From contig NC_043001.1 of NCBI RefSeq assembly GCF_006345805.1, forward strand, positions 48,360,001 through 48,424,000: a stretch of 64,000 bases of DNA. Reading direction: 5' to 3'. Below are positions 3,791 to 64,000 of the stretch, in pieces. A model generated the notes under the pieces. That model did no database searches. It saw only the letters and a program-made list of their open reading frames with translations, and was not told the origin of the DNA. This stretch comes from Octopus sinensis. Its lineage: Eukaryota. Numbering within the stretch: the first letter of the stretch is position 1; each line of letters opens with the position of its first letter. Both the position numbers and the translations under genes were made by a program.

Positions 3791-4289
3791 TCTTTTGTCC
3801 CAGACCAACACCGGTCGAGCTGACCTATGTTTCTACCGTGACCTTCTCGCCTTTATTTCCTTTTCCTTTTTCTTTCAATAATTCCAAACACAAACTAGTC
3901 TGCGAAATAAGGGGGAGCTAGGTACAATTTTTAGCAGGTTGTATGACAATGTAGCGGCTCCCTTTTAGACCACATTGCCCTTATCCATGTTGCTGATGAA
4001 GTTATTTATTTTATTAATGTCACTGCTGCTATTGTGTTGCTTTCGTAGTTAATTGTAATGTAGAGGCCGAAATAAAATCTGACAGCATTCAAAGCATCCA
4101 AGCCGTAAACACCCCGTCATTTGGCTTTTCTTATCCAGTTTGTCCTCCTTCAACACCATTGGGTGTGAGTTGAGAGTAATTTGGCTACTATATCTAGCAG
4201 GAATAGTGATAGCTTTAGAGGCTTCTTCCCCCGTATTTCCCTCGGTGTTGTTACTGTAACAACTTCTGCTATCCCAGATGTTGCTGGTG

Positions 4290-4620
4290 GTGGAGAGTGG
4301 AGTGGTGGTGGTGGTGGTGGTGGTGGTGGCGGCGGTGGTGGCGGTGGTGGTGGTGGTGGTGGTGGTGGTGGTGGTGGTGGTGGTGGGGTTGTGTGGTGGT
4401 GGAGGGTGGAGTGATGGTGGTGGATGGTGGAGGGTGGAGTGATGGTGGTGGTGGTGGTGGTGGTGTGGAGGGTGGAGTGATGGTGGTGGTGGTGGTGGTG
4501 GTGGTGGCGGTGGTGGTGGTGGTGGCGGTGGTGGCGGTGTGGCGGTGGTGGTGGTGGTGGAGGGTGGAGTGATGGTGGTGGTAGTGGAAGAGGGGTGTTG
4601 GTAGTGGTGGTAGTGGTGGT
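4290..4620. repeat. (GGT)n microsatellite, G-rich
   Basis: Directly visible. Confidence 0.95.
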
Positions 4621-4988
4621 GTTGCGGTAACTGCTGAAGTTATGTACTGCAATTGTTGCTGCTGTTGTTTCTGATGCAGTTGTGTACGCTGCCGTTGCTT
4701 GTATTGCAGCTACCTTCAAATTCTTCTGTCGCTGCATCTGCTAATGTTGCAGCAACTGCTGACGTTGCAGCAACTGTTATTGCTACCGTGAATGTTGATG
4801 CTGTTGTTTCTGTTGCTAACTGCTGCTACTGCTGCTGCTGCTGCTACTGTAATTGTTGTTGTTGTTGTTGTTGTTGTTGGTGGTGTGGTGGTGGTGGTGG
4901 TGGTGGCATTGTTGCTATTATTACAGTAATTGTCGACGGCGAATGATTGGTAGAATTGGTAGAGTGTCCGAATAGCTTGATAAATTTA

Positions 4989-6626
4989 CCTTCAGGTATT
5001 CTATCCAGCTCTTTCTGTTCTGAGTTCAAATTCTGTCCAGGTTAACGAGATCGATAAAATAAAGTACAAGCCAAATATTGAGTCGATATAATCGAGGAAC
5101 TCGCCCATTCCCCCAGATTTTAGACCCAGTACATATTATCACCTTCAGGTATTCCATCCAGCTCTTTCTGTTCTGAGTTCAAATTTTCTCCAGGTTAACG
5201 AGATCGATAAAATAAAGTACCAGGCAAATATTGAGTCGACATAATCGAGGAACTCGCCCATTTCCCCAGATTTTAGACCCAGTACATATTATTACCTTCA
5301 GGTATTCTATCCAGCTCTTTCTGTTCTGAGTTCAAATTTTCTCCAGGTTAACGAGATCGATAAAATAAAGTATCAGGCAAATATTGAGTCGATATGATCG
5401 AGGAACTCGCCCATTTCCCCAGATTTTAGACCCAGTACATATTATCACCTTCAGGTATTCCATCCAGCTCTTTCTGTTCTGAGTTCAAATTTTCTCCAGG
5501 TTAACGAAATCGATAAAATAAAGTACCAGCCAAATATTGAGTCAATATAATCGAGGAACTCGCCTATAGCCCCAGACTTTAGACCCAGTACATATTATTA
5601 CCTTCAGGTAATCCATCCAGCTCTTTCTGTTCTGAGTTCAAATTCTGTCCAGGTTAACGAAATCGATAAAATAAAGTACCAGGCAAATATTGAGTCGACA
5701 TAATCGAGGAACTCGCCTATAGCCCCAGACTTTAGATCCGGTACATATTATTACCTTCAGGTAATCCATCCAGCTCTTTCTGTTCTGAGTTCAAATTCTG
5801 TCCAGGTTAAAGAGATCGATAAAATAAAGTACCAGCCAAATATTGAGTCGATATATTCGAGGAACTCATCCATTCCCCCAGATTTTAGACCCAGTACATA
5901 TTATTACCTTCAGGTAATCCATCCAGCTCTTTCTGTTCTGAGTTCAAATTCTGTCCAGGTTAATGAAATCGATAAAATAAAGTACCAGGCACATATTGAG
6001 TCGACATAATCGAGGAACTCGCCTATAGCCCCAGACTTTAGATCCGGTACATATTATTACCTTCAGGTAATCCATCCAGCTCTTTCTGTTCTGAGTTCAA
6101 ATTCTGTCCAGGTTAAAGAGATCGATAAAATAAAGTACCAGCCAAATATTGAGTCGATATATTCGAGGAACTCATCCATTCCCCCAGATTTTAGACCCAG
6201 TACATATTATTACCTTCAGGTAATCCATCCAGCTCTTTCTGTTCTGAGTTCAAATTCTGTCCAGGTTAACGAAATCGATAAAATAAAGTACCAGGCAAAT
6301 ATTGAGTCGACATAATCGAGGAACTCGCCTATAGCCCCAGACTTTAGATCCGGTACATATTATTACCTTCAGGTAATCCATCCAGCTCTTTCTGTTCTGA
6401 GTTCAAATTCTGTCCAGGTTAACGAAATCGATAAAATAAAGTACCAGGCAAATATTGAGTCGACATAATCGAGGAACTCGCCTATAGCCCCAAACTTTAG
6501 ATCCGGTACATATTATTACCTTCAGGTAATCCATCCAGCTCTTCCTGTTCTGAGTTCAAATTCTGTCCAGGTTATAATCGAGGAACTCGCCCATTCCCCC
6601 AGACTTTAGATCCGGTATATATTATG
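4989..6626 (+). repeat. Tandem satellite with a 153-bp unit: 10 full units plus one internally deleted unit, SINE-derived
   Basis: CCTTCAGGT recurs at 4989, 5142, 5295, 5448, 5601, 5754, 5907, 6060, 6213, 6366 and 6519 (exact 153 spacing). The unit contains the SINE1 B-box-like TTCTGAGTTCAAATT and the GATAAAATAAAGTACCAG…GTCGA…ATCGA core. Confidence 0.95.
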
Positions 6627-6842
6627 AATGACAGCGGATTGGGAAAAATCGTTGGCACATCAAAGAAAATGCTTTGCAGTATTTCCTGTGATTCTTTCAT
6701 TTCTGAATTTAAATCCTGCCAATTTTAACTTTGCATTCCATCCTTTGGGGATTAACAAAACAAAACAGAAGTCAAAGTATTGGGGTTTAGGAAATCGATT
6801 ATTCTTCCACATCCCAAATTACTAGCATTATTATCTCAATTA

Positions 6843-7255
6843 AAGGCGGCAAACTGGCAAAATCGCTAACACGCTGGACGAAATGCTTAGTGGTATTTTA
6901 CCCGTCGCTGTGTTCATGAGTTCAAATTCCCCCGAGATCAACTTTGCTTTCCATCATTTTGGGGTCGATTAAATAAGTACCAGTTACGCACTGGGGTCAA
7001 TATAATCAACTTAATCCGTTCGTCTGTCCTTGTTTGTCCTCTCTGTATTTAGCCACTTGTGGGTAGTAAAAAAAAAAGGTATTTTACCCGTCGCTGTTCA
7101 TGAGTTCAAATTCTCCCGAGATCAACTTTGCTTTTCATCCTTTCGGGGTCGATAAATTAAGTACCAGTCGAGTACTGGGGTCGATGTGATCGACGACGCC
7201 CCGCCCCCTCCCCACAAATTGCAGGCTGTGTACCTATAGTAGAAAGGATTATTAT
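6843..7255 (+). mobile_element. tRNA-derived SINE1a with a SINE1b tail module nested at its GGTATTT site
   Basis: Head AAGGCGGCAAACTGGCAAAATCG (A-box-like) and GAGTTCAAATTC (B-box). The 1b tail …GTGGGTAGTAAAAAAAAAA is followed by GGTATTTT at 7078. The 1a tail is …CTATAGTAGAAAGGATTATTAT. Confidence 0.85.
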
Positions 7256-7265
7256 CTGAATTAGA

Positions 7266-7476
7266 AAGGCGGCAAGCTGGCAGAATCGTGACCACAGCTT
7301 GCGAAATGCTTAGCGGCATTTCGTCCGTCTATACGTCTTGAGTTCAAATTCCGTCGAGGTCGACTTTCATCCTTTCGGATCGATAAAATAAGTACCAGTT
7401 CAGTACTGAGGTCGATGTAATCGACTTAATCCCTTCCCGCAAATTTCAGGCCGTGTATCTACAGCAGAAAGGATTA
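7266..7476 (+). mobile_element. tRNA-derived SINE1a, tandem to the previous copy
   Basis: AAGGCGGCAAGCTGGCAGAATCG…GAGTTCAAATTCC…CTGAGGTCGATGTAATCGAC…AGAAAGGATTA. Confidence 0.85.
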
Positions 7477-7991
7477 GTTTCTGAATTAAAGATAGTTTGT
7501 TTTCTTTCACGTACTATTCGATAGCAGTAGATTGGCTAAAAAAATCTTTAGATCGTTTAACAAAATACCTTCAAGGGTTTCTTCTGGTTCTTCATGTTCT
7601 GATTTCAAATACCACGAAGACGAATTCGGTTTTGGAACCTCTGAGGGTAATAAAATGAAGTACCTATAGAAGAAACGATTATTTGGTTGTTTCTTTAACC
7701 CCAGGTCAACGCTGAACAATGTGTTTTAAGGTCTGAAGCACTCTCGGCATCAGGATGATATGTATATATATATATATGTGTGTGTGTGTGTAATATATAT
7801 ATATATATATATATGTAATATATATATACATATATACTTTATATATATATATTATATATATATATATAATATATATATATATTATAAAGAGAGTACAGTA
7901 TGAATGGGAGACAACTTGACTATTATTTCTACTGTGTCTAGTGACCGCGCATGATTCTCTGGTACCGCTGCTGCTGCTGTTGTTGTTGCCC

Positions 7992-8336: not shown

Positions 8337-8552
8337 AACGGCGAGCTGGCAGAATCGTTAGCACACCGGACAGTGGTGTTTCGTTAGACGTTACGTTTTG
8401 AGTTCCAATTCTGCCGGAGTTGACTTTACCTTTCATTCTTTTGGGGTCGAAGAAATAAGTACTTCTTGAGCAGTGAGACCAACGTCATCGACTAACACCC
8501 CCACCCCCAAAAAATTCCAGGTATTATGTCTACAGGAGAAAGCAGTATTCTT
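8337..8552 (+). mobile_element. SINE1a, diverged
   Basis: GGCGAGCTGGCAGAATCGTTAGCAC head, GAGTTCCAATTC B-box remnant. Confidence 0.75.
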
Positions 8553-10203: not shown

Positions 10204-10403
10204 TAGGGAAGTATGCAACCTAGTCCGATAGTTCCTTCAATAACGACGTTGAGGGCGACAATAACAATCATTAGTAACGATGTGTACGGCGTTCGTGATG
10301 ATGGTATGAAGTTGTTGATAACGAGGAGGAGGGGGGGAGGAGGAGGAGAGCGACGACGCCGACGACGATAATAATGATGACGTAGATGGTATTGAGGAGG
10401 AAA

Positions 10404-10595
10404 TGCTTAGCGGTATTTCGTCTGCCGTTACGTTGTGGGTTCAAATTCCGCCGAGGTCGACTTTGCCTTTCATCCTTTCGGGGTCGATAAATTAAGTACC
10501 AGTTACGCACTGGGGTCGATGTAATCGACTTAATACCTATGTCTGTCCTTGTTTGTCCCCTCTGTGTTTAGCCCCTTGTGGGTAATAAAGAAAAA
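10404..10595 (+). mobile_element. SINE1b (Tx1-type tail), 5'-truncated, with 16-bp target-site duplication
   Basis: TSD GGTATTGAGGAGGAAA at 10388-10403 and 10596-10611. Tail GTCTGTCCTTGTTTGTCCCCTCTGTGTTTAGCCCCTTGTGGGTAATAAAGAAAAA. Confidence 0.92.
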
Positions 10596-11409
10596 GGTAT
10601 TGAGGAGGAAAAGGTTGGTGGTGATCTTAGTAATCGTGGGGTGGGGTCGTTGTGATGGTCTTGGGGATAGTGGTGGTGGTGGTTGTGGTGATATTTGCTG
10701 AGGAGACAAAGGCGTTAACAATTCCTATTTTCTGTGAATATTGACGTTTCATCGGTACATTTTCATTACATCTGTCAAGAAAAAATAAAATTATTGATTT
10801 TCACTTTAGCTGTGACACACTATATGACTCCAGTTAAAGTGACTGCTACTTATTGAGGATGCTGTGGCAACTATGCTGCGACACAAAATAAAAAAGTGAT
10901 TGCAAGGATAGTTTAATGAGAGAAGGTGTTAAAAATAAACTGTGTCAGAATGAAAACAAAAAAACTGAATATAGGCTCTGTTAGCTCGATAAATCCACTG
11001 CGATTGAGAAGTGTCAAACTGCAAGGACAAACGTGGCTTCCATGAGCTTCATTGACGCCATTCCTCATTGGTTGACATATGTATAGTTCCGCGGTTTTAG
11101 CAGAAGAGAGATGAAAAGATTGATTTCACGTATCTACTACCGCCAAAAAATACAATGAAAACACAGTCGGCAGCGTACATCATCACACAAACTCACACAA
11201 ATACACAGACGCATACGCACAAATACAAACACACACACACACACACACACACAACATATATATATATATTATATAATATATATTATATATTATGCATTCA
11301 TACACATAGTGTATGTATTTATGTGTGTGTATGTGTGTGCGTGTGTGTGTGTGTGATGTGTGTATGTGTGTGTGAGTGTGTGTGTGTGCGTGTGTGTGTG
11401 TGTTTATGA

Positions 11410-12731: not shown

Positions 12732-13135
12732 GTGTTGTTTTTCTTATTCTCTGTCTTAAGTTTTCTTTTTTTTTTCTCATTTATATAGATCCGTAAGGTA
12801 GTATTCAATACGTAGTATAGTATTTATGCATAGTTAGCAGTACAGAATCACCCAGAGTTTCACACCACTTAAGTTCGATCCACGAACATTCATGAGGAAC
12901 ACATACATACATACGTACATACATACATACATACATACATACATACATTCTCATGAGTACGAAGCGACGATGATCACGAAGTGACGTGATCAGCACGTAA
13001 TGTCGATTTTACATACAGGGAAAAAAGAAAGAAAACCTTTCACTCATATATCCGTTATCTAGTGTATACGTTCTATTCGACTGTCGCTAATTCCGTCTCC
13101 ACCTACGGATTTTATTGTCGTACCCATAGATACAA

Positions 13136-13977
13136 AGATACATACATACATACATACATACATACATACATACATACATACATACATACATACGTTCATA
13201 CATACTACATACATACATACATACATACATTCATACATACATGCATACATACATACATACATACATTCATACATACATACATACATACATCATCATTCAT
13301 ACAATACATACATACATACATACATACATACATACATACATACTTCATACATCATACATACATACATACATACACATACATTCATACATACATACATACA
13401 TACATACATACATACATACATACACATACATACATACATACATTCATACATACATACATACATACATACATACATTCATACATACATACGTCATACATAC
13501 ATACATACATACATACATTCATACATACATGCATACATACATACATACATTCATACATACATACATACATACATACATGCATTCATACATACATGCATAC
13601 ATACATACATACATACATACATACATACATACATTCATACATACATACATACATACATACATTCATACATACATACATACATACATACATACATACATGC
13701 ATACATACATACATACATACATACATACATACATTCATACATACATACATACATACATACATAGATACATACATACATTCATACATACATGCATACATAC
13801 ATACATACATACATACATTCATACATACATACATACAAACATACATACATACATACATACATACATGCATACATTCATACATACATACATACATACATAC
13901 ATACATACATACATACATACATACATACATACATACATACATACATTGATACATACATACATACATACATACATTCA

Positions 13978-14011
<34 letters not shown>

Positions 14012-14345
14012 CATTCATGCATACATACATACATACATACTACATACATACATACATACATACATACATACATACAATACATTGATACATACATACATAC
14101 ATACATTCATACATACATACATACATAAGATACATACATACAATATACATTCATGCATACATACATACATACATACATTCTACATACATACATACATACA
14201 TACATACATACATACATTCATATACATACATACATACATACATTCATACATACATTCATACATACATATACATACATACATACATACATACATGCATACA
14301 TACATACATACACGCACATATACATACAAATAAACGTGCATACAT
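13136..14345. repeat. About 1.2-kb (TACA)n tetranucleotide satellite with TTCA/TGCA variants
   Basis: Directly visible; the source of the YIHT/MYVC ORFs. Confidence 0.97.
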
Positions 14346-14460
14346 GCATACATACATATGCATATGGAGTGTGTGTGTCTCGAGCTGGATGTGATTTTAT
14401 GTTTTCAATTTGAACTCTTCCCAGAACGAAAGAACTGTTTTCTGACAAAGAAAGAATACC

Positions 14461-17540: not shown

Positions 17541-17543
17541 GGA

Positions 17544-17587
<44 letters not shown>

Positions 17588-17829
17588 AGGAAGGAAGGAA
17601 AAGGAAGGAAGGAAGGAAGGAAGGAAGGAAGGAAGGAAGGAAGGAAGGATGGAAGGAAGGATGGAAGGAAGGAAGGAAGGAAGGAAAGAAAGACAGAAAG
17701 AAAGGAAGAAAGCTAGGAAGGAAGGAAGGAAGGAAGGAGAAGGAAGGAAGGGAGGAAGGGAGGGAGGAAGAAAGAAAGAAAGTAAGGAAGGAAGGAAGGA
17801 ATGAAGAAAGAAAGAAAGGAAGGAAAGAA

Positions 17830-17863
<34 letters not shown>

Positions 17864-18120
17864 AAAAAAGGAAGGAAGGAAGGAAGGAAGGGAGGAAGAA
17901 AGAAAGAAAGGAAGGAAGAAAGGAAGAAAGAAAGGAGGAAAAAAGAAAGAAAGGAAGGAAGGAAGGAAGAAAGAAAGAAAGAAAGAAAGAAAGGAAGAAA
18001 GGAAGGAAAGAAAGAAGGAAGAGGAAGAAAGAAAGAAAGAAAGAAGGAAAAAAGAAAGAAAGGAAGAAAGAAAGAAACAAAGAAGGAATGAAGGAAGGAA
18101 GGAAAGAAAGAAAGAAAGAA
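17541..18120. repeat. Polypurine (GAAA)n/(GGAA)n tract, about 580 bp
   Basis: Directly visible; the source of the KEGR/FLPS ORFs. Confidence 0.97.
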
Positions 18121-25920: not shown

Positions 25921-26599
25921 GTCTGACGATGGCTCAGCCGGCCAAAGCTCCGAAGTCACTGTCAACAGCATTCTTGTATACGAATAATATATTTGTACTC
26001 CACAAAGTATAGAGTAACCCATCAGATTAATGTGAAATCGTTTTCATTATAAATGAACATAAAAATTAACTTTAATATATATATATATATATATACATAC
26101 ACACATAGACACACACGCAGGCACACTCACACACACATTCACACACGTGTTTGTATGCATGTGTGTGACTGTGTGTTTAGTGTGTCTATAATGAAATGTA
26201 TATCGTATGTGCATGCACATGTTTGCATATGTGTGCAGGTGTGTGTACACATAAAACTACGATAGTCAGCTCAACTGAGATCAATAATGATTCAAAATAG
26301 CATATATGTATTCATTATTCCGTTAACAGGTTGTCAGACCTCAGAAAGGTTGTAAGGAGTTAATAATAGTTGCTTCAGTATGTAGGAAATATAAGATGAA
26401 AAGAATTACTTGGCTTGTGAGGTTCATTAAGTATTAGAATGCGGAATTTAACTGCATGTTCTTATCAAATTCTTACGGAATTTTCACGTTTGAATTGCTC
26501 CAGCATGCAGGAGCGTTTTCATTTTTGGATTTTTTTATCTGATATTTTTCGTGTCAGTTATAATGCATTCCTCAGATCGTGGTATCTAAATATATTCTT

Positions 26600-26809
26600 T
26601 TCTACTCTTGGCACAAGGCCCAAAATTTTTGGGCGGGGAGCCAGTCGATTAGATCGACCCCAGTGGGCAACTGATACTTAATTTATTGACACCGAAAGGA
26701 TGAAAGCAAAGTCGAGCTCGGCGGAATTTGAACTCAGAACGTAAAGACAGATGAAATACCGCTAAACGTTTCGCTCGGCGTGCTAACGTTTCTACCAGCT
26801 CGCCGCCTT
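26600..26809 (-). mobile_element. SINE1a
   Basis: Reverse complement of TAAGGCGGCGAGCTGGTAGAAACGTTAGCACG…GAGTTCAAATTCCGCCGAG…CCTTGTGCC. Confidence 0.88.
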
Positions 26810-30165: not shown

Positions 30166-30249
30166 TATTATTAATATTATTATTGTTGTTGTTGTTCTTC
30201 TTCTTCTTATTATATTATTATATTATCATTATTATTATTGTTGTTGTTG

Positions 30250-30296
<47 letters not shown>

Positions 30297-30299
<3 letters not shown>

Positions 30300-32770
30300 T
30301 AGTTTTATTTTTATAGCGTGCTTTCACTTCACTACCGAGCGCAGCTCTGTGTGCCTTGGGATGTACTGTGATTTGTTGTGATGCTCTGATGGTTATTGTA
30401 TGGAAAGTGTTCTGCGTAGGATGTGTGCAGTGCCTAGTAGTGCAATTTTCTGTATGTTATATGTGTTTGTAAGTATGGTGTTTTTGTATGTATTTGTCTG
30501 AATATTTTTTTATCATGCCTAATGCACCTACTATGATAGGAATTGTTTCTGTTTTCAGGTTCCACATTCTAGTTACCTCTATTTCCAGGTCTTTGTATTT
30601 TGAGAGTTTCTCCATTTCTTTTAGAGACACGTTGTCATCTGCTGCGGTATTGATACATCAATTAGAAAGCATTTTTTTTCTTCATGATCTCTGACAACTA
30701 TATCTGGTCTGTTGGCCTTAATTTCTCTATCTGTGTGTATCGGCATATCCCAGAGTATGGGTGCTTTCTCGTTTTCTGTGACCTTTCTGGTGTTGTGCCT
30801 ATACCATCTTTTTTCTGTTGTTATTCCATAATGTTGGCATAGCTTCCAATGTATGTAGGTTCCAACTCTGTCATGTCTGTGAATATATTCCTTCTTAGCC
30901 AGGACTGGGCAGCTAGAGATAATATGATTTATTGTTTCTTGTCCATCTCCACATATTCTGCAGTTACTTGTAATATTTCTTTTCATTACATGTTTTTGGT
31001 AATTTCTGGTGGGGAGGCTTTGGTCTTGTGCTGCAATTAAAAATCCCTCTGTTTCTGCTTTGAGTCCTGAGCTTCTCAACCATTGCTGGGATTTTTCTTC
31101 TATCTTTTCTTTTCTTTTGCGTTTAGTTAGTGCAGTATTTACCATGAAGGGGGCTTTTCTTGCCATCGTTTTATCATGGTTCGTTGCTTTTCTATTATTA
31201 GTTTGGATTTCATTTGTTTATAGCTTTTGTTGTTTCTTCATCATCTTCTTCTTCTTCTTTGTGTTTATTAGGTGGTATGATCTCTTGTTTGTATTGTCAG
31301 CTTCCTTAAATACTGAGAACAGTTTTTTTGTTTTGCTCGTGTTTTGCTGCTATCTGGATCAGTTTTCCTTCCTTCTGAAGTAGGTATTTTTGCAGTCCTA
31401 TGGTGGTTATTTTATAGTAGTTTTCCAGCTGTATAAGGCCTCTACCACCTTCTATACGTTGTATATATAGTTTTCTATGTCAGATTTTGGGTGATGCATC
31501 CTAGATCCTGTCAGTATTTTTCTTGTTTTCCTATCTATTTTGGACAGTTCATTTCGTGTCCGTTAAGGATATTGTAGTTGTAAACTTATAACTGGGACAG
31601 CTAAAGTGTTGATACCTATTATCTTGTTTTTAGCATTGAGCTCTGTTTTTAGTATTGATCTAACTCGTCTATAATATTCTTTTTTTTTTATTTTTCTCTT
31701 TCATTTGTGTGTGTTGTGTTTTATCTAGTTCATGGATTCCTAAGTATTTGTAAGTTTGGCTTTGGTCTAATTCTTTATTTCATTGGTTTTATCTAGTGTG
31801 ATGCTGTTACTCTTAACTAGTTTTCCTCTTTTCATGGTTACTTTGGCGCATTTTTCTAATCCAAATTTCATATCTTTTTCTTTGGTAAATCCATGAACTG
31901 TCTTTAATAGTGTTTCCAGCTGTTTGTCATTTGCAGCGTATAGTTTTAGGTCATCCATATATAAAAGGTGGCTGATCGTTTTGCCGTAACATTTATATCC
32001 GCATCCAGTTCTATTTAGCATATCAGATAGAGGTGACAGTGCCAAGCAGAAAAGGAGTGGAGAGAGCGTGTCTCCTGGAATATTCCTCTTCTAATGGGGA
32101 TGTCTTTGGTTTTCATGAGTCCCTCTTTTGTTTGGAGGTGTAGGACTGTTTGCCATTTATTCATAGAGTGCTCTATGAATTTTATGATTGTTGGTGCTAC
32201 TTTGTTAATGGCTAGTGTTTCGAGGATCCATGTGTGGGGGATGCTATCAAACGCCTTTTTGTAGTCAATCCAGGCCATACTGAGGCCTTTCTTCTTCTGT
32301 GGCTGTCTTCAGTTACGGCTTTATTAATCATTAGTTGATCTTTACAGCCATATGAGCCCTTGCGGCATCCTTTCTGCTCTTCTGGGAACAGTTTGTTTTC
32401 GTCCAGGTGCTTGTTCAGCTTTGCGATATCACTGCAGTAAATGCCTTGAACATAGTAGAGAGGCAGGTTATTGGTCTGTAGTTTTTCTGGTTTTGTTGTT
32501 TCATTTGATTTGGGAATTAAGATGGTTTTCCCCTTCGTGAGCCATTCAGGCATTGTCTCTGGCTCTGCTAGTATGCTGTTAAAGTTTTCAGCCAGCTTTT
32601 TGTGCATTCCTGTTAGATATTTCAACCAGAAGTTGGGGATCTTGTCATGCCCAGGTGCCTTCCAGTTGCTTAGTTTTTGCAGTGCCTGGGTGACCTCTAC
32701 AGTTGTTATGGGGGTCCAAAGTTGTTCAGATGCCGAGTTTGTTATTTTCATACTCCTTTTTTTCATACTT
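30297..32770 (-). mobile_element. R4/Dong-clade non-LTR retrotransposon B (RT, CCHC finger, RLE), frameshifted
   Basis: NWKAPGHD, EQKGCRKGSYGCKDQL, AWIDYKKAFDS, LLYMDDLKLY, FGLEKC, ETEGFLIAAQDQ, CRICG…ETINHIISSC, ILWDMPIHTDREIKANRPDIV…LIDVSIP. The 3' end AAAACTACTG is followed by (AAT)n. Confidence 0.95.
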
Positions 32771-32781
32771 TTTTTTCATAC

Positions 32782-32835
<54 letters not shown>

Positions 32836-32839
32836 GTTA

Positions 32840-34290
32840 TTATATGTTTGACTTTTGCTTTATATTTGTACAAGTTGGCTTCAAGTCTCACCCAGAGACC
32901 TCAAGAGACAACAGGTTGGAAGTTCATGTTGTTATGCCTAGTGTGCCATATATTTGTGTGGGGGGGGTTGTGTTGTACTAGTAAATATCTAAAAAAAAAA
33001 GAGAAAAAAACGAAAATTATGTTCTCCTTTTTTGTATTTTGTTTTGGATGTTATTTATCCACAGGGTTTGTTTGGGTGGTGGTACTCCTGTTTGGATGGG
33101 TTTGAGTGAGTATCCAGCTTCTTTTGTGACTACAGTGGCTGCTGCGTATACTAAGTCATTTAGCTCAGTGATATCGCTTTTTGTTTCAGTGCTTATTAGT
33201 TCCGTGACGGCTAGGTTTATGCTGTTTATAATTGGTGTTGTTGTTTTGTTTATTTTGATTTTTGGGAGGTATGGTCGGTGGTCCATTTTGAGCTCTGTGG
33301 TATTCAGTTCTTTGATTATTTTACTTTTTATATTATCATAACCATTAGGCTGCCCTTCGTTGTTTCCAGGTTTTAGATTTGTGTTGCTTTCTTTCTTATT
33401 TATATATTTGTTTACCGTGTTTTGGCTTGCTGTTTGTTGTGTATTATTATGCATCCTTACGGTCTGGGTTTGTTGTTATTTGTTTACATCGTGTTTGTTG
33501 GAAGTGTTACGTTTGTCTTCGTGTTTTACTGTTTCAGTGTTTATATTATTGGGCATTGTTGTGTGGCTTCTATCTACATTTTCCTGGTGTATTTTTTCTT
33601 TCAGATGTTCTATTTCTATTTCTGATATTTTTTTGCGTTGAGAATGTATCTTTAGCTAGTTTATTAGGGTTCATTGCTGTATCCAAGTCTATATTTATGT
33701 TATTTTCCTTCCATATTTTATATGTATGTGTTGTTGGGTTTTCATTTTTTGGGTAGAGCACTGCTGTGAAGTATGCGTGTAGGATAGAAATGTATTCCTC
33801 ACGTGTCCATTTATGTCTTTTGGGTTTTATTTGCGGGACATGAGGAACAACGTCCGGCCCATTATTTTGACGGTCGTCATTTTCGTAGGGTACCGGTCCG
33901 TTCATTTCTGTTGTCACATTGTTTTGCACGTGTAGTTTTTCGTATATTTTGTGTTGTAAGTTTAAAGTACGTACCTCCCGATTGTTATTATTGGGTTTAA
34001 TTTCTTCGTAGTTCCTTTGTACATGGTGATTGGGGTCGGGGATGATCTGGTGTTGATGGATCGTAATGTTTCACGCATGTTTACATGTGTTGTGTTAGAG
34101 GTGGAGATGATATCGAGTCACAATACATCATTTCGTTTCGAAAATAGTAATAAATTTTAATGAGTATTACTTACTCGGATACAGTCCAATCCTTTGTTAG
34201 GAAATCTTTGGCTCCATACGATATCCTTGTTTTCGCTGTTTGTGGATAGATTTCGGAGCTCTGTTTTATCGTTCGTACATCTTAAACGTC
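32840..34290 (-). mobile_element. R4/Dong-clade element A: 5' UTR and N-terminal ORF joined to a short 3'-UTR-like segment and (AAT)n
   Basis: KRHKWTREEY, HRPYLPKIK, DITELNDLVYAAA and LWINNIQNKI resemble R4/Dong N-terminal motifs. 33000-32840 is non-coding and ends in (AAT)n. Confidence 0.75.
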
Positions 34291-35564: not shown

Positions 35565-35780
35565 TAAGGCAGCGAGCTGGTAAATTAGCGCGTCGGGCAA
35601 AATACTTAGCGATATTTCGTCCGTCCAAACGTTCTGAATCGAAATTCCCCTGAAATCGACTTTGCTTTTCATCCTTTCGATAAAATAAATACAATTTGTG
35701 CACTAGGGTTCAATGTGATCGACTTATACCCTCCCCGAAATTTCTAGCCCAGTGTCAAAATTTGAAATCGATGTCTTGCT
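35565..35780 (+). mobile_element. SINE1a, diverged
   Basis: AAGGCAGCGAGCTGGTAA…AAATACTTAGCGATATTTCGTCC…GTGATCGAC. Confidence 0.75.
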
Positions 35781-36193
35781 TGTCCCTCTTTCTATATTTG
35801 GATTGATTTTTTTTAGAGATAAATTATTGTCTATTGAGCCGGATACATCACTCAGGTGATATCTCGTTTTCTTATTTTTCTTGACAAGACCCAGTAGATT
35901 TATTCTAATCTTCCTGTCTTTTTGATCACTTTCTCACACTCGGAGTCACTTTCTATTGCATAATGATATCATTTGTTTTCTGTCTATAAACAATGAGCCA
36001 CGTATGTTGCGCGACGAATGTGAATACTTTGTCAAAAGTTGTAGAGAACAAATATTGTGGGAGAATGCGGGTCATATAGCTCATGCAACTTGCTTGAGGA
36101 TCCCATTTTATCAATTATCATAGTAAACACCGGGCTATATAATAATAAGCAATAATAAATCTCTGAACGAGATGTAAACAGTAACTGCACGAC

Positions 36194-39349: not shown

Positions 39350-39449
39350 NNNNNNNNNNNNNNNNNNNNNNNNNNNNNNNNNNNNNNNNNNNNNNNNNNN
39401 NNNNNNNNNNNNNNNNNNNNNNNNNNNNNNNNNNNNNNNNNNNNNNNNN
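39350..39449. other. Assembly gap (100 N)
   Basis: Run of N; the round number suggests a placeholder of unknown true size. Confidence 1.
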
Positions 39450-43829: not shown

Positions 43830-44585
43830 TGGTCACATGATCGAAGTTTGAGCCTGATTGCGCCATTTTTTCTGGCTTCAAAGGGTAAGCTTGGCCGCTC
43901 CACTAGCAATGTGCACCAAAGAAAAATAAAGAGCAATGATCCGATTTATCTGGTCGGAAGGTGCGTCAGGTACTGAAATTCATCAGAGGCTTTTAACGCA
44001 ATAGGGGGACAGTGCACTACTACGTAGAAGTGAGTATGAATGGATGGAGAAGATTAAAGTTGACAGGACAAGCGTGACGCACGAAGAGGGAGCAGGGCGC
44101 CCATCAACCTTCACCACTGACGAGAAGATTCAGATATCTCGAGAGATGGTGATGGAGAACCGGGGAGTTACCATCAGTGACGTAGGTCGTTCTCTGCAGA
44201 TTAGTCATGGTTCTGCCTATCAAATCATCCACAATGAGTTCGGCTTCCATGAAGTCTATGCAAGACGGGTGCCAAGAGAGTTTACCGCAGAGCACAAGCG
44301 CAAACGTCTTGAGGCCTGTCAACGTTTACTCGATCGCTACAACTATAAGGGCGAAGAATTTTTGAGCAGAATAGTTACAGATGAAACATTGGTCCATCAT
44401 TATGAGGCAGAATCCAAAAGAGTATGGAATGGATACATCCTGGTTTGCCAGCGACGAAGAAATTCAAGACTCAGTCTTCTCATTTTGGGGATTCAAAAGG
44501 GTCTTTTCTGGAAGACTACATGGAAAAGGGGTGTACGATCAACAGTTCAAGATGCAGGGATTTGCTGGCCAACGAAATGAAGCCA
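43830..44585 (+). mobile_element. mariner transposase fragment (N-terminus to first catalytic D)
   Basis: GAGRPST, VTISDV…ISHGSAYQII…FHEVYARRVPREF (WVPxxL-like), FLSRIVTDETLVHHYEAESKR. Confidence 0.88.
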
Positions 44586-60084: not shown

Positions 60085-60458
60085 GGAGGCATCAGTAATA
60101 AGCTGATTAGATGGACCCCAGTACTCAACTGGTACTAAACTTATCGATTCCAAAAGGATATAAGTCATGGTCGATCGCCGTGGAATTTGAACTCAGAACA
60201 TAAAGACAGACGAAATACCTATTTCTTTACTACCCACAAGGGGCTAAACACAGAGAGGACAAACAAGGACAGACAAACGGATTAAGTCGATTACATCGAC
60301 CCGAAGTGCGTAACTGGTACTTATTTAATCGACCCCGAAAGGATGAAAGGTAAAGTCGACCTCGACGGAATTTGAACTCAGAACGAAGCGGCAGACGAAA
60401 TACCGCTAAGCACTTTCGAAATACCGCTAAGCTAACGTTTTTGCCATCTCGCCGCCTT
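60085..60458 (-). mobile_element. SINE1a host with nested SINE1b (60220-60416), 9-bp TSD
   Basis: TSD CGAAATACC (GGTATTTCG on the element strand) at 60211-60219 and 60417-60425. Confidence 0.9.
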
Positions 60459-62624: not shown

Positions 62625-62850
62625 TAAGGAGACGAGCTGGCAGAATCGTTAGCTCGACAGGCTAGATGCTTAGCTGCATTTCGTCCGTCTTTACGTTCTA
62701 AGTTCAAATGTTCAAATTCCTCCAAGGTCGACTTTGCCTTTCATCCCTCCGAATCCGATAAAATAAGTACCAATTGAGTTCTTCGTATCGACGTAATTGA
62801 CTTACCCGCTCTCCCGAAATTGCTTGCCTTGTGCCAAAATCTGAAATCAT
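62625..62850 (+). mobile_element. SINE1a
   Basis: AAGGAGACGAGCTGGCAGAATCGTTAGC…GATAAAATAAGTACC…CCTTGTGCC. Confidence 0.82.
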
Positions 62851-62989
62851 TATGTTTCTTGCAGATATTATCTCCCAGGTAATCACCCCCACCAAACACA
62901 CATCCGTGAACATAATTTGTCCTGAACGGACGTCTCAACCAGACTAATGTATATTTCATCGCTGTAAAATTTCGTTGGTTTCAAGTACC

Positions 62990-63172
62990 TATTTCTTTAT
63001 TACCCACAAGGGGCTAAACACAGAGGGGACAAACAAGGACAGACATAGGTATTAAGTCGATTACATCGACCCCAGTGCGTAACTGGTACTTAATATATCT
63101 ACCCCGAAAGGATGAAAGGCAAAATCGACCTCGGCGGAATTTGAACTCACAACGTAACGCAGACGAAATACG
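62990..63172 (-). mobile_element. SINE1b body, interrupted at its GTATTTCG site by a Tx1-like LINE
   Basis: The reverse complement reads GTATTTCGTCTGCGTTACGTTGTGAGTTCAAATTCCGCC…GGGTAATAAAGAAATA, followed by GGTACTT. Confidence 0.9.
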
Positions 63173-63173
63173 A

Positions 63174-64000
63174 ATTTCTTTATTGCCCACCGGGGGCCAA
63201 ACATAGATATGGACAGTACAACTGATGGGATCAGTGAATCGATATGATTTTACATAAATGTGACATCAAAAATAAAATACAATACATAAAAATCGAATGG
63301 AATACACAGTACAAAAACAAAAGAAATGAAGCGATGATCAAGTTACGCTCCGATCCCACAAGCCCCGATCTACCGCTGATACCTTTTTATTTTCTCTTTT
63401 TTTTTTCCTCGTATATTTTCACACGGTTCCTTGCACGCACAACACTCGTGCAACATACTTCCATCTCTTTTGGAACGTACACTCTGACAGACACCTCTTC
63501 TCCAGCCACAGTTTCCTTTTCAAATGAAAAGAAAAAAAGGATCGTAAATTGTCACCAGAGATAAAGTTGCCTGTCTTAATTCCTTATATCCTAGTATTCC
63601 ATACAGCCTCTTTTGCTATTGCTACAACCGTGAGAAAACAATTCTTACCTTCGTTCGTTAGAACTCCCGGTGGGTCAATTTTTATAATTGACTCAGTCGA
63701 CAGCCGTACTCTTCCTTCGCCGGACAACAGATGTTCAGCATAAGCCCACATTTCAGTTATCTCCGGACACTGAACAATAGCGTGAGGGACGGTTTCCCTG
63801 TCCCCACCGCATCTTGGACAGGTCGGCGACTGACGTTTACCATGTCTTGCGAGCTTATCCCAAACGGGCAAGGCACCTCTGTAGCATTGCCAGGTTAAGG
63901 ACTTTTGGAAGTTGTCCAACGTTCTCAACCCGAATGTACGATGAAACAAGCTGTCCAGTTGAATAAATCCGAGACCTAGAGTCGACCCCAGGCCATCGTC
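63174..64000 (-). mobile_element. Tx1/L1-type non-LTR retrotransposon, 3' end (ORF2 C-terminal zinc-finger region and 3' UTR); continues beyond the window
   Basis: SLTWQCYRGALPV…CPRCGGDRETVPHAIVQCP…W…AKEAVWNTR matches the L1/Tx1 C-terminal CCHC region. The U-rich 3' UTR ends GGTGGGCAATAAAGAAAT. Confidence 0.82.

What the first reader, a model, noticed from the sequence alone, without database searches (positions are those of the whole stretch)
10388..10611. SINE1b is target-specific: all four copies end at GGTA(T/C)T
Seen: the 3' junctions on the element strand are GGTATTTT (7078), GGTATTGA (10596), GGTATTTC (60219, minus) and GGTACTTG (62989, minus). At this locus the 16-bp TSD GGTATTGAGGAGGAAA is perfect and lies in non-SINE DNA. 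GGTATT therefore belongs to the target rather than the element. Inference: a sequence-specific endonuclease nicks next to GGTAYT. Strong target specificity is unusual for SINEs.
Basis: partly seen in the sequence, partly recalled or inferred. Interest (0 to 1): 0.75.

Follow-up and report, generated by a model that had tools for sequence, protein, structure and literature searches.

The report
SINE that inserts at GGTAYT sites
A short octopus-type jumping element (SINE1b) and probably its parent LINE insert next to the six-base word GGTAYT, often inside the head of older SINEs, which is a real but not unprecedented kind of target preference seen here in only four copies.

Summary
All four SINE1b tails in the window (..GTGGGTA[A/G]TAAAGAAA[T/A]A) are followed directly by GGTATT (three copies) or GGTACT (one copy). 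The chance of this per insertion is about 6e-4.

The hexamer was present before insertion at all three loci that can be tested. The evidence is a perfect 16-bp duplication in non-SINE DNA, a 9-bp duplication and a 20-bp (really ~58-bp) duplication. The last two lie inside older SINE heads, which themselves carry GGTATTTCG.

It is L1-like, has a zf-RVT domain, and shares the SINE1b tail. It abuts CGTATTTCG of a SINE head.

The sister family SINE1a has the same body but a different tail. It starts its duplications with ATTATT-like words and never with GGTAYT (0 of 8).

So target-selective, target-primed reverse transcription is well supported. Whether the selector is the LINE endonuclease or pairing of read-through RNA (GGUAUU) with the nicked target is unresolved. 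Three related LINE copies elsewhere do not sit at GGTAYT.

Target-specific SINEs are already known (SINEU-3 with Tx1). I could not obtain genome-wide flanks. With n=4, interest is moderate.

The parts
10388..10403 (+). 5' copy of the target-site duplication GGTATTGAGGAGGAAA, in non-SINE, purine-rich DNA
   Evidence: Identical to 10596-10611 and occurs only twice in the window. Its last 4 nt (GAAA) also match the SINE position just 5' of TGCTTAGC, which gives microhomology at the 5' junction.
10404..10595 (+). SINE1b copy, 192 bp, from TGCTTAGCGGTATTTCG.. to ..GTGGGTAATAAAGAAAAA
   Evidence: It is 97% identical to the copy at 62992-63171.
10596..10611 (+). 3' copy of the 16-bp target-site duplication, beginning with GGTATT
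6884..7077 (+). Older SINE1b copy (83% identical to the 10404 copy), nested in a SINE1a head. Only about 6951-7077 is diagnostically 1b.
   Evidence: The stretch 6892 to ~6950 shares private variants with the host SINE at 7078 to ~7134.
6892..6911 (+). 5' copy of the perfect 20-mer GGTATTTTACCCGTCGCTGT. The duplicated host sequence really extends about 58 nt.
7078..7097 (+). 3' copy of the 20-mer. The host SINE1a continues to about 7262.
   Evidence: The empty-site join gives a continuous SINE head.
60220..60416 (-). SINE1b copy (92% identical to the 10404 copy), from AAAGTGCTTAGCGG.. to ..GTAGTAAAGAAATA, nested in an older SINE head
60417..60425 (-). 5' copy of the 9-bp duplication GGTATTTCG, which is part of the host SINE head
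60211..60219 (-). 3' copy of GGTATTTCG. The host SINE body continues to about 60087 and is only 77% identical to 1b.
62990..63171 (-). SINE1b copy that starts at GTATTTCG, so its first ~10 nt are missing. It ends ..GTAATAAAGAAATA.
62984..62989 (-). GGTACT at the 3' junction of that copy, in non-SINE flank. No 5' duplicate is found in the window.
63173..64000 (-). 3' end of an L1-like LINE that runs off the window. It has an ORF2 C-terminus with a zf-RVT zinc knuckle, an in-frame premature stop at 63586-63584, and a family stop at about 63421-63419. The ~246-nt 3' UTR ends ..TCTATGTTTGGCCCCCGGTGGGCAATAAAGAAATT, which is homologous to the SINE1b tail. It is followed by CGTATTTCGTCTGC.

Best explanation
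SINE1b is a non-autonomous retroposon of about 195 bp. Its last ~35-40 nt, a small hairpin plus AATAAAGAAAT, are borrowed from an L1/Tx1-like LINE whose 3' end is in this window.

It integrates by target-primed reverse transcription at places where the element-sense strand reads 5'-GGTAYT. The opposite strand is nicked immediately 3' of 5'-ARTACC. cDNA synthesis starts at the last A of the tail. The second strand is broken 9 to 20 or more nt downstream, so every duplication starts with the hexamer.

The head of this SINE family contains ..TTAGCGGTATTTCG.., so resident SINEs are frequent targets. This yields nested tail|GGTATTTCG-SINE junctions.

I take the nick preference of the LINE's APE-type endonuclease as the main selector, possibly reinforced by RNA-primer pairing.

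Shown: the junctions, the duplications, the shared tail and the contrast with SINE1a. Inferred: who makes the nick and why it falls there.
For: - Junction word: 4 of 4 tails are followed by GGTAYT. This is 6.4e-4 per site by chance.
- Hexamer in the target: it is present in the 5' duplicate at 3 of 3 testable loci, and joining the flanks restores intact host SINE heads.
- Independent events: the nested copies differ in age from their hosts (92% vs 77% identity to the 10404 reference copy). The duplications vary in length (9, 16, 20+ bp), which fits target-primed reverse transcription.
- Partner LINE: the LINE tail matches the SINE1b tail at 81-85% over 33-42 nt, and this is the only such match in the window. 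Both share a small hairpin.
- LINE junction: the LINE itself abuts CGTATT, 5 of 6 positions, at the same place in a SINE head.
- LINE type: a zf-RVT C-terminus. Relatives are closest to human L1 ORF2p among solved structures. Distant full-length relatives carry Exo_endo_phos + RVT_1 + zf-RVT.
- Control: SINE1a has the same body but another tail, and shows 0 of 8 junctions at GGTAYT. Its duplications begin with ATTATT-like words (Fisher p=0.002).
- Literature: the endonuclease is the main determinant of target choice in non-LTR elements, and Tx1-group L1 relatives are target-specific (PMC4494074, PMC3747384).
Against: - There are only four SINE insertions and one LINE junction.
- The LINE junction is a 5 of 6 match, and its 5' end lies outside the window.
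- Three related LINE copies with the same conserved tail are not at GGTAYT. The Octopus sinensis copy L004 reads ..GAAATT|GGATGTTC. L010 and L013 read ..GAAATC|(ATT)n.
- The endonuclease domain of this LINE was never seen.
- The hexamer is transcribed into read-through SINE RNA, so pairing alone could explain the pattern. The one variant, GGTACT, is exactly a G.U wobble in such a pairing.
Confidence: 0.45

Rival explanations
1. RNA-guided site choice. The endonuclease is not very specific. Pol III (or the LINE's pol II) reads past the tail into the flank, so the RNA ends ..GAAAUA-GGUAUU.. Only nicked targets whose 3' end (..AATACC-3') pairs with that hexamer prime cDNA synthesis efficiently. 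Each new copy recreates the same flank, so the preference is inherited along the SINE lineage.
For: - The hexamer sits exactly where target-derived sequence begins, so every copy would transcribe it.
- The GGTACT variant equals a G.U wobble against GGUAUU (inference).
- Related LINE copies have other words after the same tail: (ATT)n twice and GGATGT once.
- SINE1a has ATTATT-like words there, and its duplications start with them. This is as expected if the word is set by the RNA 3' end and not by the enzyme.
- Two or three of five targets are SINE heads, where pairing could extend to GGUAUUUCG. This is suggestive only: p is about 0.02-0.1.
- Precedents: L1 priming depends on complementarity between primer and poly(A) (PMC3649969). 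Co-transcribed target sequence strengthens the target-specific integration of R2-type elements (statement in PMC4494074).
Against: - Microhomology-driven priming is usually of variable length. Here all testable targets carry the full hexamer, and in the two non-SINE targets similarity stops sharply after 6-7 nt.
- The model needs a nick exactly at the hexamer border each time.
- No RNA data are available.
Confidence: 0.33
2. GGTAYT is simply the last six bases of the element. The real duplications are shorter (GAGGAGGAAA, TCG, TTACCC..), and the upstream GGTATT copies are coincidences.
For: - All copies end with it.
- Loose positional similarity to the GGATTATT end of SINE1a tails.
Against: - It needs three coincidences. 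One is an exact GGTATT abutting the 10-bp repeat at 10388 (about 2e-4).
- The other two are host SINEs broken exactly after their own GGTATT, with a 3-bp duplication at one of them.
- The LINE with the same tail lacks the hexamer in L004, L010 and L013.
Confidence: 0.07
3. The true target is the SINE head, reached by homology-driven insertion or template switching between SINE sequences, not a hexamer. The two non-SINE sites are chance look-alikes.
For: - Two of four SINE1b copies, and the LINE, lie at the same point of SINE heads.
- At 7078 the duplicated host sequence is about 58 nt, and the 5' join lies within homologous SINE body.
Against: - The 10388 site has a clean 16-bp duplication in DNA with no SINE similarity, yet starts with GGTATT.
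- The 62989 flank is also non-SINE.
- At 60425 the new copy restarts at its own 5' end after a 9-bp duplication. This is an insertion, not a switch.
Confidence: 0.08
4. Small-sample accident or assembly artefact, with no real preference.
For: Only four copies were seen, and no second genome region with 1b was obtained. The 20.8 kb of O. sinensis in L004 has none.
Against: - About 2e-13 by chance.
- Flanks are unrelated and copies are of different ages.
- 0 of 8 for the sister family.
Confidence: 0.03

Closest known systems
SINEU-3 and its Tx1-clade LINE partners in crocodilians (Kojima 2015, PMC4494074)
   Same: A SINE that shares its 3' tail with an L1-related, APE-type LINE and inherits a target preference. 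It inserts into another interspersed repeat at a fixed point with a recurring duplication. Tandem copies sandwich the duplication.
   Different: - SINEU-3 aims at one ~16-bp site of one DNA transposon family (90% of copies). Here the common denominator is only a hexamer, and two of four sites are in unique DNA.
- The heads differ (snRNA vs a tRNA/CORE-like head).
- Tx1-clade membership of the LINE here was not tested.
Human L1/Alu: endonuclease consensus TTTT/AA plus primer-poly(A) pairing (PMC8565326, PMC3649969)
   Same: A short word at the start of every duplication, seen for both LINE and SINE. Both nick preference and primer-template complementarity shape it. The LINE relatives here are most similar to L1 ORF2p among solved structures.
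   Different: - The word is G/C-containing (GGTAYT), not a T/A tract.
- The tail is AATAAAGAAAT[A/T], not poly(A). Complementarity therefore exists only if the RNA reads through into the flank.
R2/R1-type site-specific LINEs whose co-transcribed downstream target RNA helps precise integration (as summarised in PMC4494074 and PMC3747384)
   Same: Reverse transcription starts at a fixed internal point of a longer RNA. The downstream RNA equals the target sequence.
   Different: - Those elements aim at long unique sites in rDNA. R2 uses a restriction-like endonuclease.
- Here the site is a hexamer and the LINE is L1-like.
Octopus tRNA-derived/CORE SINEs OR1/OR2 (Ohshima & Okada 1994, cited in PMC4758252 and PMC4824008)
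   Same: Host group and general build: head, CORE-like body (..GAGTTCAAATTCC..CTTTCGGGGTCGATAAATTAAGTACCAG..) and LINE-type tail. This resemblance is recalled from memory.
   Different: No reference sequence was available here, so identity was not tested. No target preference for these SINEs turned up in the papers searched.

Membership tests
LINE-mobilised SINE | 3' tail shared with a LINE | tested here: met
   The last 33-42 nt are 81-85% identical to the LINE 3' end at 63173-63217(-). These are the only such matches in the window. Both share a small hairpin.
LINE-mobilised SINE | Dispersed copies flanked by target-site duplications of variable length | tested here: met
   Duplications of 16, 9 and 20+ bp at three of four copies. 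Copies are 83-97% identical to each other.
LINE-mobilised SINE | Head derived from tRNA (or 5S/7SL) with a pol III promoter | tested here: not met
   - ARAGORN finds no tRNA-like gene.
- Rfam finds nothing at gathering score, and no tRNA hit at E<=10 on a full-length SINE1a head.
- Only a B-box-like GAGTTCAAATTCC is seen by eye.
- Both clear 1b 5' ends lack the first ~37 nt of the 1a head.
Target-specific SINE/LINE pair (SINEU-3/Tx1 type) | Most copies sit at the same target sequence, and the duplication starts with the same word | tested here: met
   4 of 4 tails are at GGTAYT and 3 of 3 duplications begin with GGTATT. The sample is very small.
Target-specific SINE/LINE pair (SINEU-3/Tx1 type) | The target is one particular repeat or gene family | tested here: not met
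   Two targets are SINE heads and two are unique, non-SINE DNA.
Target-specific SINE/LINE pair (SINEU-3/Tx1 type) | The partner LINE shows the same target | tested here: inconclusive
   The window LINE abuts CGTATT in a SINE head, a 5 of 6 match. Relatives L004, L010 and L013 abut GGATGT or (ATT)n.
Tx1 group of the L1 clade | Phylogenetic placement of the RT within Tx1 | not tested
   No reference Tx1 sequences were available. I can say only that relatives match human L1 ORF2p better than R2 proteins.
L1-clade APE-type LINE | N-terminal APE endonuclease, RT, and C-terminal Cys-His motif | tested here: inconclusive
   - zf-RVT is present in the window copy.
- RT is present in close relatives P0151 and P0152.
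- Exo_endo_phos is seen only in distant relatives P0088 and P0121.
- The 5' part of the window copy lies beyond position 64000.
L1-clade APE-type LINE | Poly(A) or A-rich simple tail | tested here: not met
   The copies end at AATAAAGAAAT[T/C] with no poly(A).

The most novel reading that the evidence does not exclude
The target word is carried by the RNA, not by the protein. Each copy transcribes the first bases of its own target as a 3' extension, and that extension guides the next integration by pairing with the nicked DNA. A SINE lineage would then have a heritable 'target memory' that can change by mutation. This would explain why sister families with related tails use different words (SINE1a ATTATT, SINE1b GGTATT, related LINEs (ATT)n), and why the head of the SINE itself, which carries GGTATTTCG, is hit so often.
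Probability: 0.3. Interest if true: 0.65.

Novelty: new member of a known kind. Interest (0 to 1): 0.45.

Why it matters
SINEs make up a large share of octopus genomes. A family that homes to a hexamer found in the head of resident SINEs would help explain nested and tandem SINE clusters, and it would tend to spare unique DNA.

A short G/C-containing target word in an L1-like LINE/SINE pair would also be a convenient system for one specific question. It could separate how much of target choice comes from the endonuclease and how much from primer-RNA pairing.

This becomes worth pursuing only once genome-wide flanks confirm the four-copy pattern.

Tried and rejected
1. Protein database as a proxy for genome-wide flanks. 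The reverse frame across the junction reads [K/Q/E]-Y-L-F-L-Y-Y-P-Q-G-A-K-H.. The first query was too short and the 40-aa query found no candidate.
2. Exact-pattern scan of JGI metagenome contigs for the 1b tail: no match.
3. The search for related loci with the LINE C-terminus. Alignment A1 was too loose. Alignment A2 found nothing confirmable in metagenome or prokaryote genome contigs.
4. Contigs encoding LINE relatives.
   - Only O. sinensis L004, L010 and L013 reach a LINE 3' end.
   - L001-L003, L005, L007-L009, L011 and L012 stop short or have other tails. L006 ends with a tail-like CTTGTGGCCAAT that I could not call as a junction.
   - A window ORF (44044-44580) and P0155 were not on record.
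   - L004's 20.8 kb holds no SINE1b.
5. tRNA origin of the head: ARAGORN and Rfam were negative.
6. Selection for a pol III terminator at GGTATTTT: rejected. Only one of the four flanks has four or more T's.
7. The 153-bp satellite as further tail|GGTATT junctions: rejected. Its unit border lies 13 nt upstream of GGTA[A/T]T and its tail is 1a-like.
8. Segmental duplication of one junction: rejected, because the flanks are unrelated.

Full report
**What is there**

The window is full of one SINE group. A BLAST of the copy at 10404-10595 finds 16 matching stretches. Most share only the head and body (query positions 1-127) and end in a ..CCTTGTGCCTATAGTAGAAAGG|ATTATT.. tail; I call this family SINE1a.

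Four copies have another 3' part..TTAAT[CCGTT/ACCTA]TGTCTGTCCTTGTTTGTCC[T/C]CTCTGTGTTTAGCCCCTTGTGGGTA[A/G]TAAAGAAATA, and are SINE1b. They lie at 6884-7077(+), 10404-10595(+), 60220-60416(-) and 62990-63171(-). A profile of the tail finds no further SINE copy in the window, only one additional tail that belongs to a LINE.

**Check of the observation**

All four tails are followed at once by GGTATT (7078, 10596, 60219-) or GGTACT (62989-). GGTAYT occurs 82 times on both strands of the window, no more than shuffles give. The chance at a given oriented position is therefore 6.4e-4, and about 2e-13 for four events.

The copies are 97%, 92% and 83% identical to the 10404 copy and have unrelated flanks. 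They are separate insertions of different ages.

The 16-mer GGTATTGAGGAGGAAA is present exactly twice, at 10388-10403 and 10596-10611, in DNA without SINE similarity.

**Is the hexamer target or element?**

Three loci can be tested.

- *Locus 10388.* The duplication begins with GGTATT.
- *Locus 60219.* The reading on the minus strand is ..GGCGGCGAGATGGCAAAAACGTTAGCTTAGC GGTATTTCG | AAAGTGCTTAGCGGTATTTCG...GTAGTAAAGAAATA | GGTATTTCG TCTGTCTTTATGTTCTGAGTTCAAATTCC.. This is a 9-bp duplication inside an older SINE head. The host is 77% identical to the 10404 reference copy and the insert 92%.
- *Locus 7078.* A perfect 20-mer, GGTATTTTACCCGTCGCTGT, flanks the insert inside another SINE1a. The two sides share private variants for about 58 nt (TTTTACCCGTCGC, TCATGAG, CCGAGATCAAC, TTGCTTT) before the left one turns into diagnostic 1b sequence. 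The host sequence was therefore duplicated over about 58 nt and the 5' join was made within homologous SINE body.

Joining the flanks at the two nested loci gives continuous SINE heads.

So the hexamer was in the target in 3 of 3 cases. The reading that it is only the element's end needs three coincidences. The fourth copy has no recognisable 5' duplicate, because a LINE sits at its 5' side.

**The partner LINE**

From 64000 down to 63173 on the minus strand runs the C-terminus of a non-LTR ORF2.

- It has a zf-RVT zinc knuckle.
- It has an in-frame premature stop at 63586-63584 where relatives read on.
- The family stop is at about 63421-63419.
- The 3' UTR is about 246 nt and ends TCTATGTTTGGCCCCCGGTGGGCAATAAAGAAATT.

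The last 33-42 nt match the SINE1b tails at 81-85% identity. Both can form the same small hairpin, with one compensatory pair.

Relatives found in protein searches include an Octopus sinensis protein. Close relatives with an RT domain hit human L1 ORF2p best among solved structures. Distant full-length relatives have Exo_endo_phos + RVT_1 + zf-RVT. The LINE is therefore L1-like and probably APE-type. Tx1 membership was not tested.

This LINE copy is followed by CGTATTTCGTCTGC.., which is the SINE head from its GGTATT position onward with one mismatch. Either it inserted into that head, or the SINE re-used a GGTACT site at the LINE's end. Both readings put the LINE at a GGTAYT-like word. The 5' end that would decide between them is outside the window.

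**Internal control**

SINE1a has the same head and body but a different tail. None of eight 1a-type 3' junctions is at GGTAYT (Fisher p=0.002).

Where duplications can be called they start with A/T words right after ..AGAAAGG:
- AATAYATTTAGAYAC (copy 26643-26765-);
- ATT[G/C]TTTAAGTAT (copy 8372-8493);
- ATTATTATCTGAATTAAA, repeated between three or four tandem SINEs at about 6620-7500.

The junction word therefore goes with the tail, meaning with the partner or with the RNA 3' end, and not with the SINE body.

**Evidence from elsewhere**

I could not get genome-wide flanks (see the section on what was tried). Three related LINE 3' ends were recovered.

- O. sinensis CM016876.1 (L004): about 70% nt identity over 823 nt up to the very end, reading ..GTGGCTAATAAAGAAATT|GGATGTTCTACC.
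- A Logan contig (L010)..GTGGTCAATAAGGAAATC|ATTATTATT...
- A JGI contig (L013)..GTGGCCAATAAAAGAAATC|(ATT)n.

The tail and its end point are thus conserved across the LINE group, but GGTAYT is not a general rule for it.

**Mechanism**

The anatomy fits target-primed reverse transcription. The strand opposite to the element is nicked just after 5'-ARTACC, and cDNA starts at the last tail base. A second break 9 to 20 or more nt downstream gives duplications that begin with the hexamer.

*Endonuclease as selector.* I favour the nick preference of the LINE's endonuclease (about 0.45). All tested targets carry a strict full hexamer. Similarity stops sharply after 6-7 nt in the two non-SINE sites. 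The literature holds that the endonuclease mainly sets target choice in non-LTR elements and that Tx1-group L1 relatives are target-specific (PMC4494074, PMC3747384).

*RNA pairing as selector.* The main rival (about 0.33) is that read-through RNA carrying GGUAUU pairs with the nicked target. L1 priming depends on primer/poly(A) complementarity (PMC3649969). Co-transcribed target sequence strengthens the specific integration of R2-type elements (PMC4494074). This rival explains three things neatly: the different words after the same tail in related LINEs, the ATTATT word of SINE1a, and GGTACT as a G.U wobble.

*SINE heads as targets.* Heads carry about 14% of the window's GGTAYT sites but took 2 of 4 SINE1b insertions, or 3 of 5 counting the LINE. 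This is suggestive only (p about 0.1 and 0.02), and either model can explain it.

**Comparison and novelty**

The nearest described case is SINEU-3, mobilised by Tx1 LINEs into one site of Mariner-N4_AMi, with tandem copies sandwiching the duplication (PMC4494074). Here the target is a hexamer, half the sites are in unique DNA, and the element's own family supplies many targets.

My paper searches turned up no report of target preference for octopus SINEs. I file this as a new member of a known kind, namely target-selective LINE/SINE pairs. It rests on four copies in one window, so interest is moderate.

Noticed in passing
window 4986-6574: A 153-bp satellite with 10.4 units and 93% matches, built from a 5'-truncated SINE1a-like unit (..GGTA[A/T]TCCATCCAGC..TTCTGAGTTCAAATTC..tail ..CCCAGTACAT). 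The units are separated by ATTATTACCTTCA, so the unit border lies 13 nt upstream of the head's GGTATT position.
   Followed up: partly
window ~6620-7500: Three or four SINE1a copies lie head to tail, each followed by the same ~18-bp word (ATTATTATCTCAATTAA / ATTATTATCTGAATTAGAA / ATTAGTTTCTGAATTAAAG). This looks like repeated insertion into one regenerated target site, as described for tandem SINEU-3. Old tandem duplication is not excluded.
   Followed up: partly
window 8372-8540 and 26560-26800(-): SINE1a duplications begin with A/T words directly after the conserved ..AGAAAGG tail: ATT[G/C]TTTAAGTAT and AATAYATTTAGAYAC. The sister family therefore seems to have its own ATTATT-like junction word.
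   Followed up: partly
window 10404 and 60416(-): The two SINE1b copies with a clear 5' junction both start at the same point, (G)AAA[T/G]TGCTTAGCGG. They lack the first ~37 nt of the SINE1a head (AAGGCGGCGAGCTGGCAGAAACGTTAGCACGCCGGGC). This suggests a defined RNA 5' end and not random truncation.
   Followed up: no
window 63584-63586(-): The LINE copy has an in-frame TAA where all close relatives continue for about 55 more residues (..R[LM]KGL..FHLKRK..ER..). This copy is therefore dead.
   Followed up: yes
window ~30200-33454(-): A second, different LINE. It has broken ORFs at 33017-33454, 32212-32766 and 30621-31166, the last with a zf-RVT domain. It ends in a long (AAT)n/(AAC)n run at about 30300-30200.
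   Followed up: partly
window 35605-35800 and 62667-62850: Two SINE copies with a third kind of 3' part (..GTG[T/C]CAAAAT[T/C]TGAAATC..). The one at ~35740-35790 continues with GATGTCTTGCTTGTCCCTCTTTCTATATTTGG, which loosely resembles the 1b/LINE 3' region.
   Followed up: no
window 39350-39449: A run of exactly 100 N, which is an assembly gap.
   Followed up: no
window 13125-14358, 17542-18120, 4285-4621: Very long microsatellites: (CATA)~312, (GAAA)~144 and (TGG)~114. They generate the longest spurious ORFs in the window.
   Followed up: no
proteins P0155, P0005, P0151, P0152 (loci L005, L013): Close relatives of this cephalopod-type LINE are deposited as 'hypothetical protein' in JGI metagenomes. 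One is named as a zinc-binding protein of a Herbaspirillum MAG. This is most likely animal DNA contaminating those bins.
   Followed up: no
L010 1573-1613 and L013 1990-2105: Two LINE relatives from different samples both end ..AATAA[G/A]..GAAATC and run straight into (ATT)n in the same phase. This is either a slippage-made tail or insertion into (ATT)n microsatellites.
   Followed up: no
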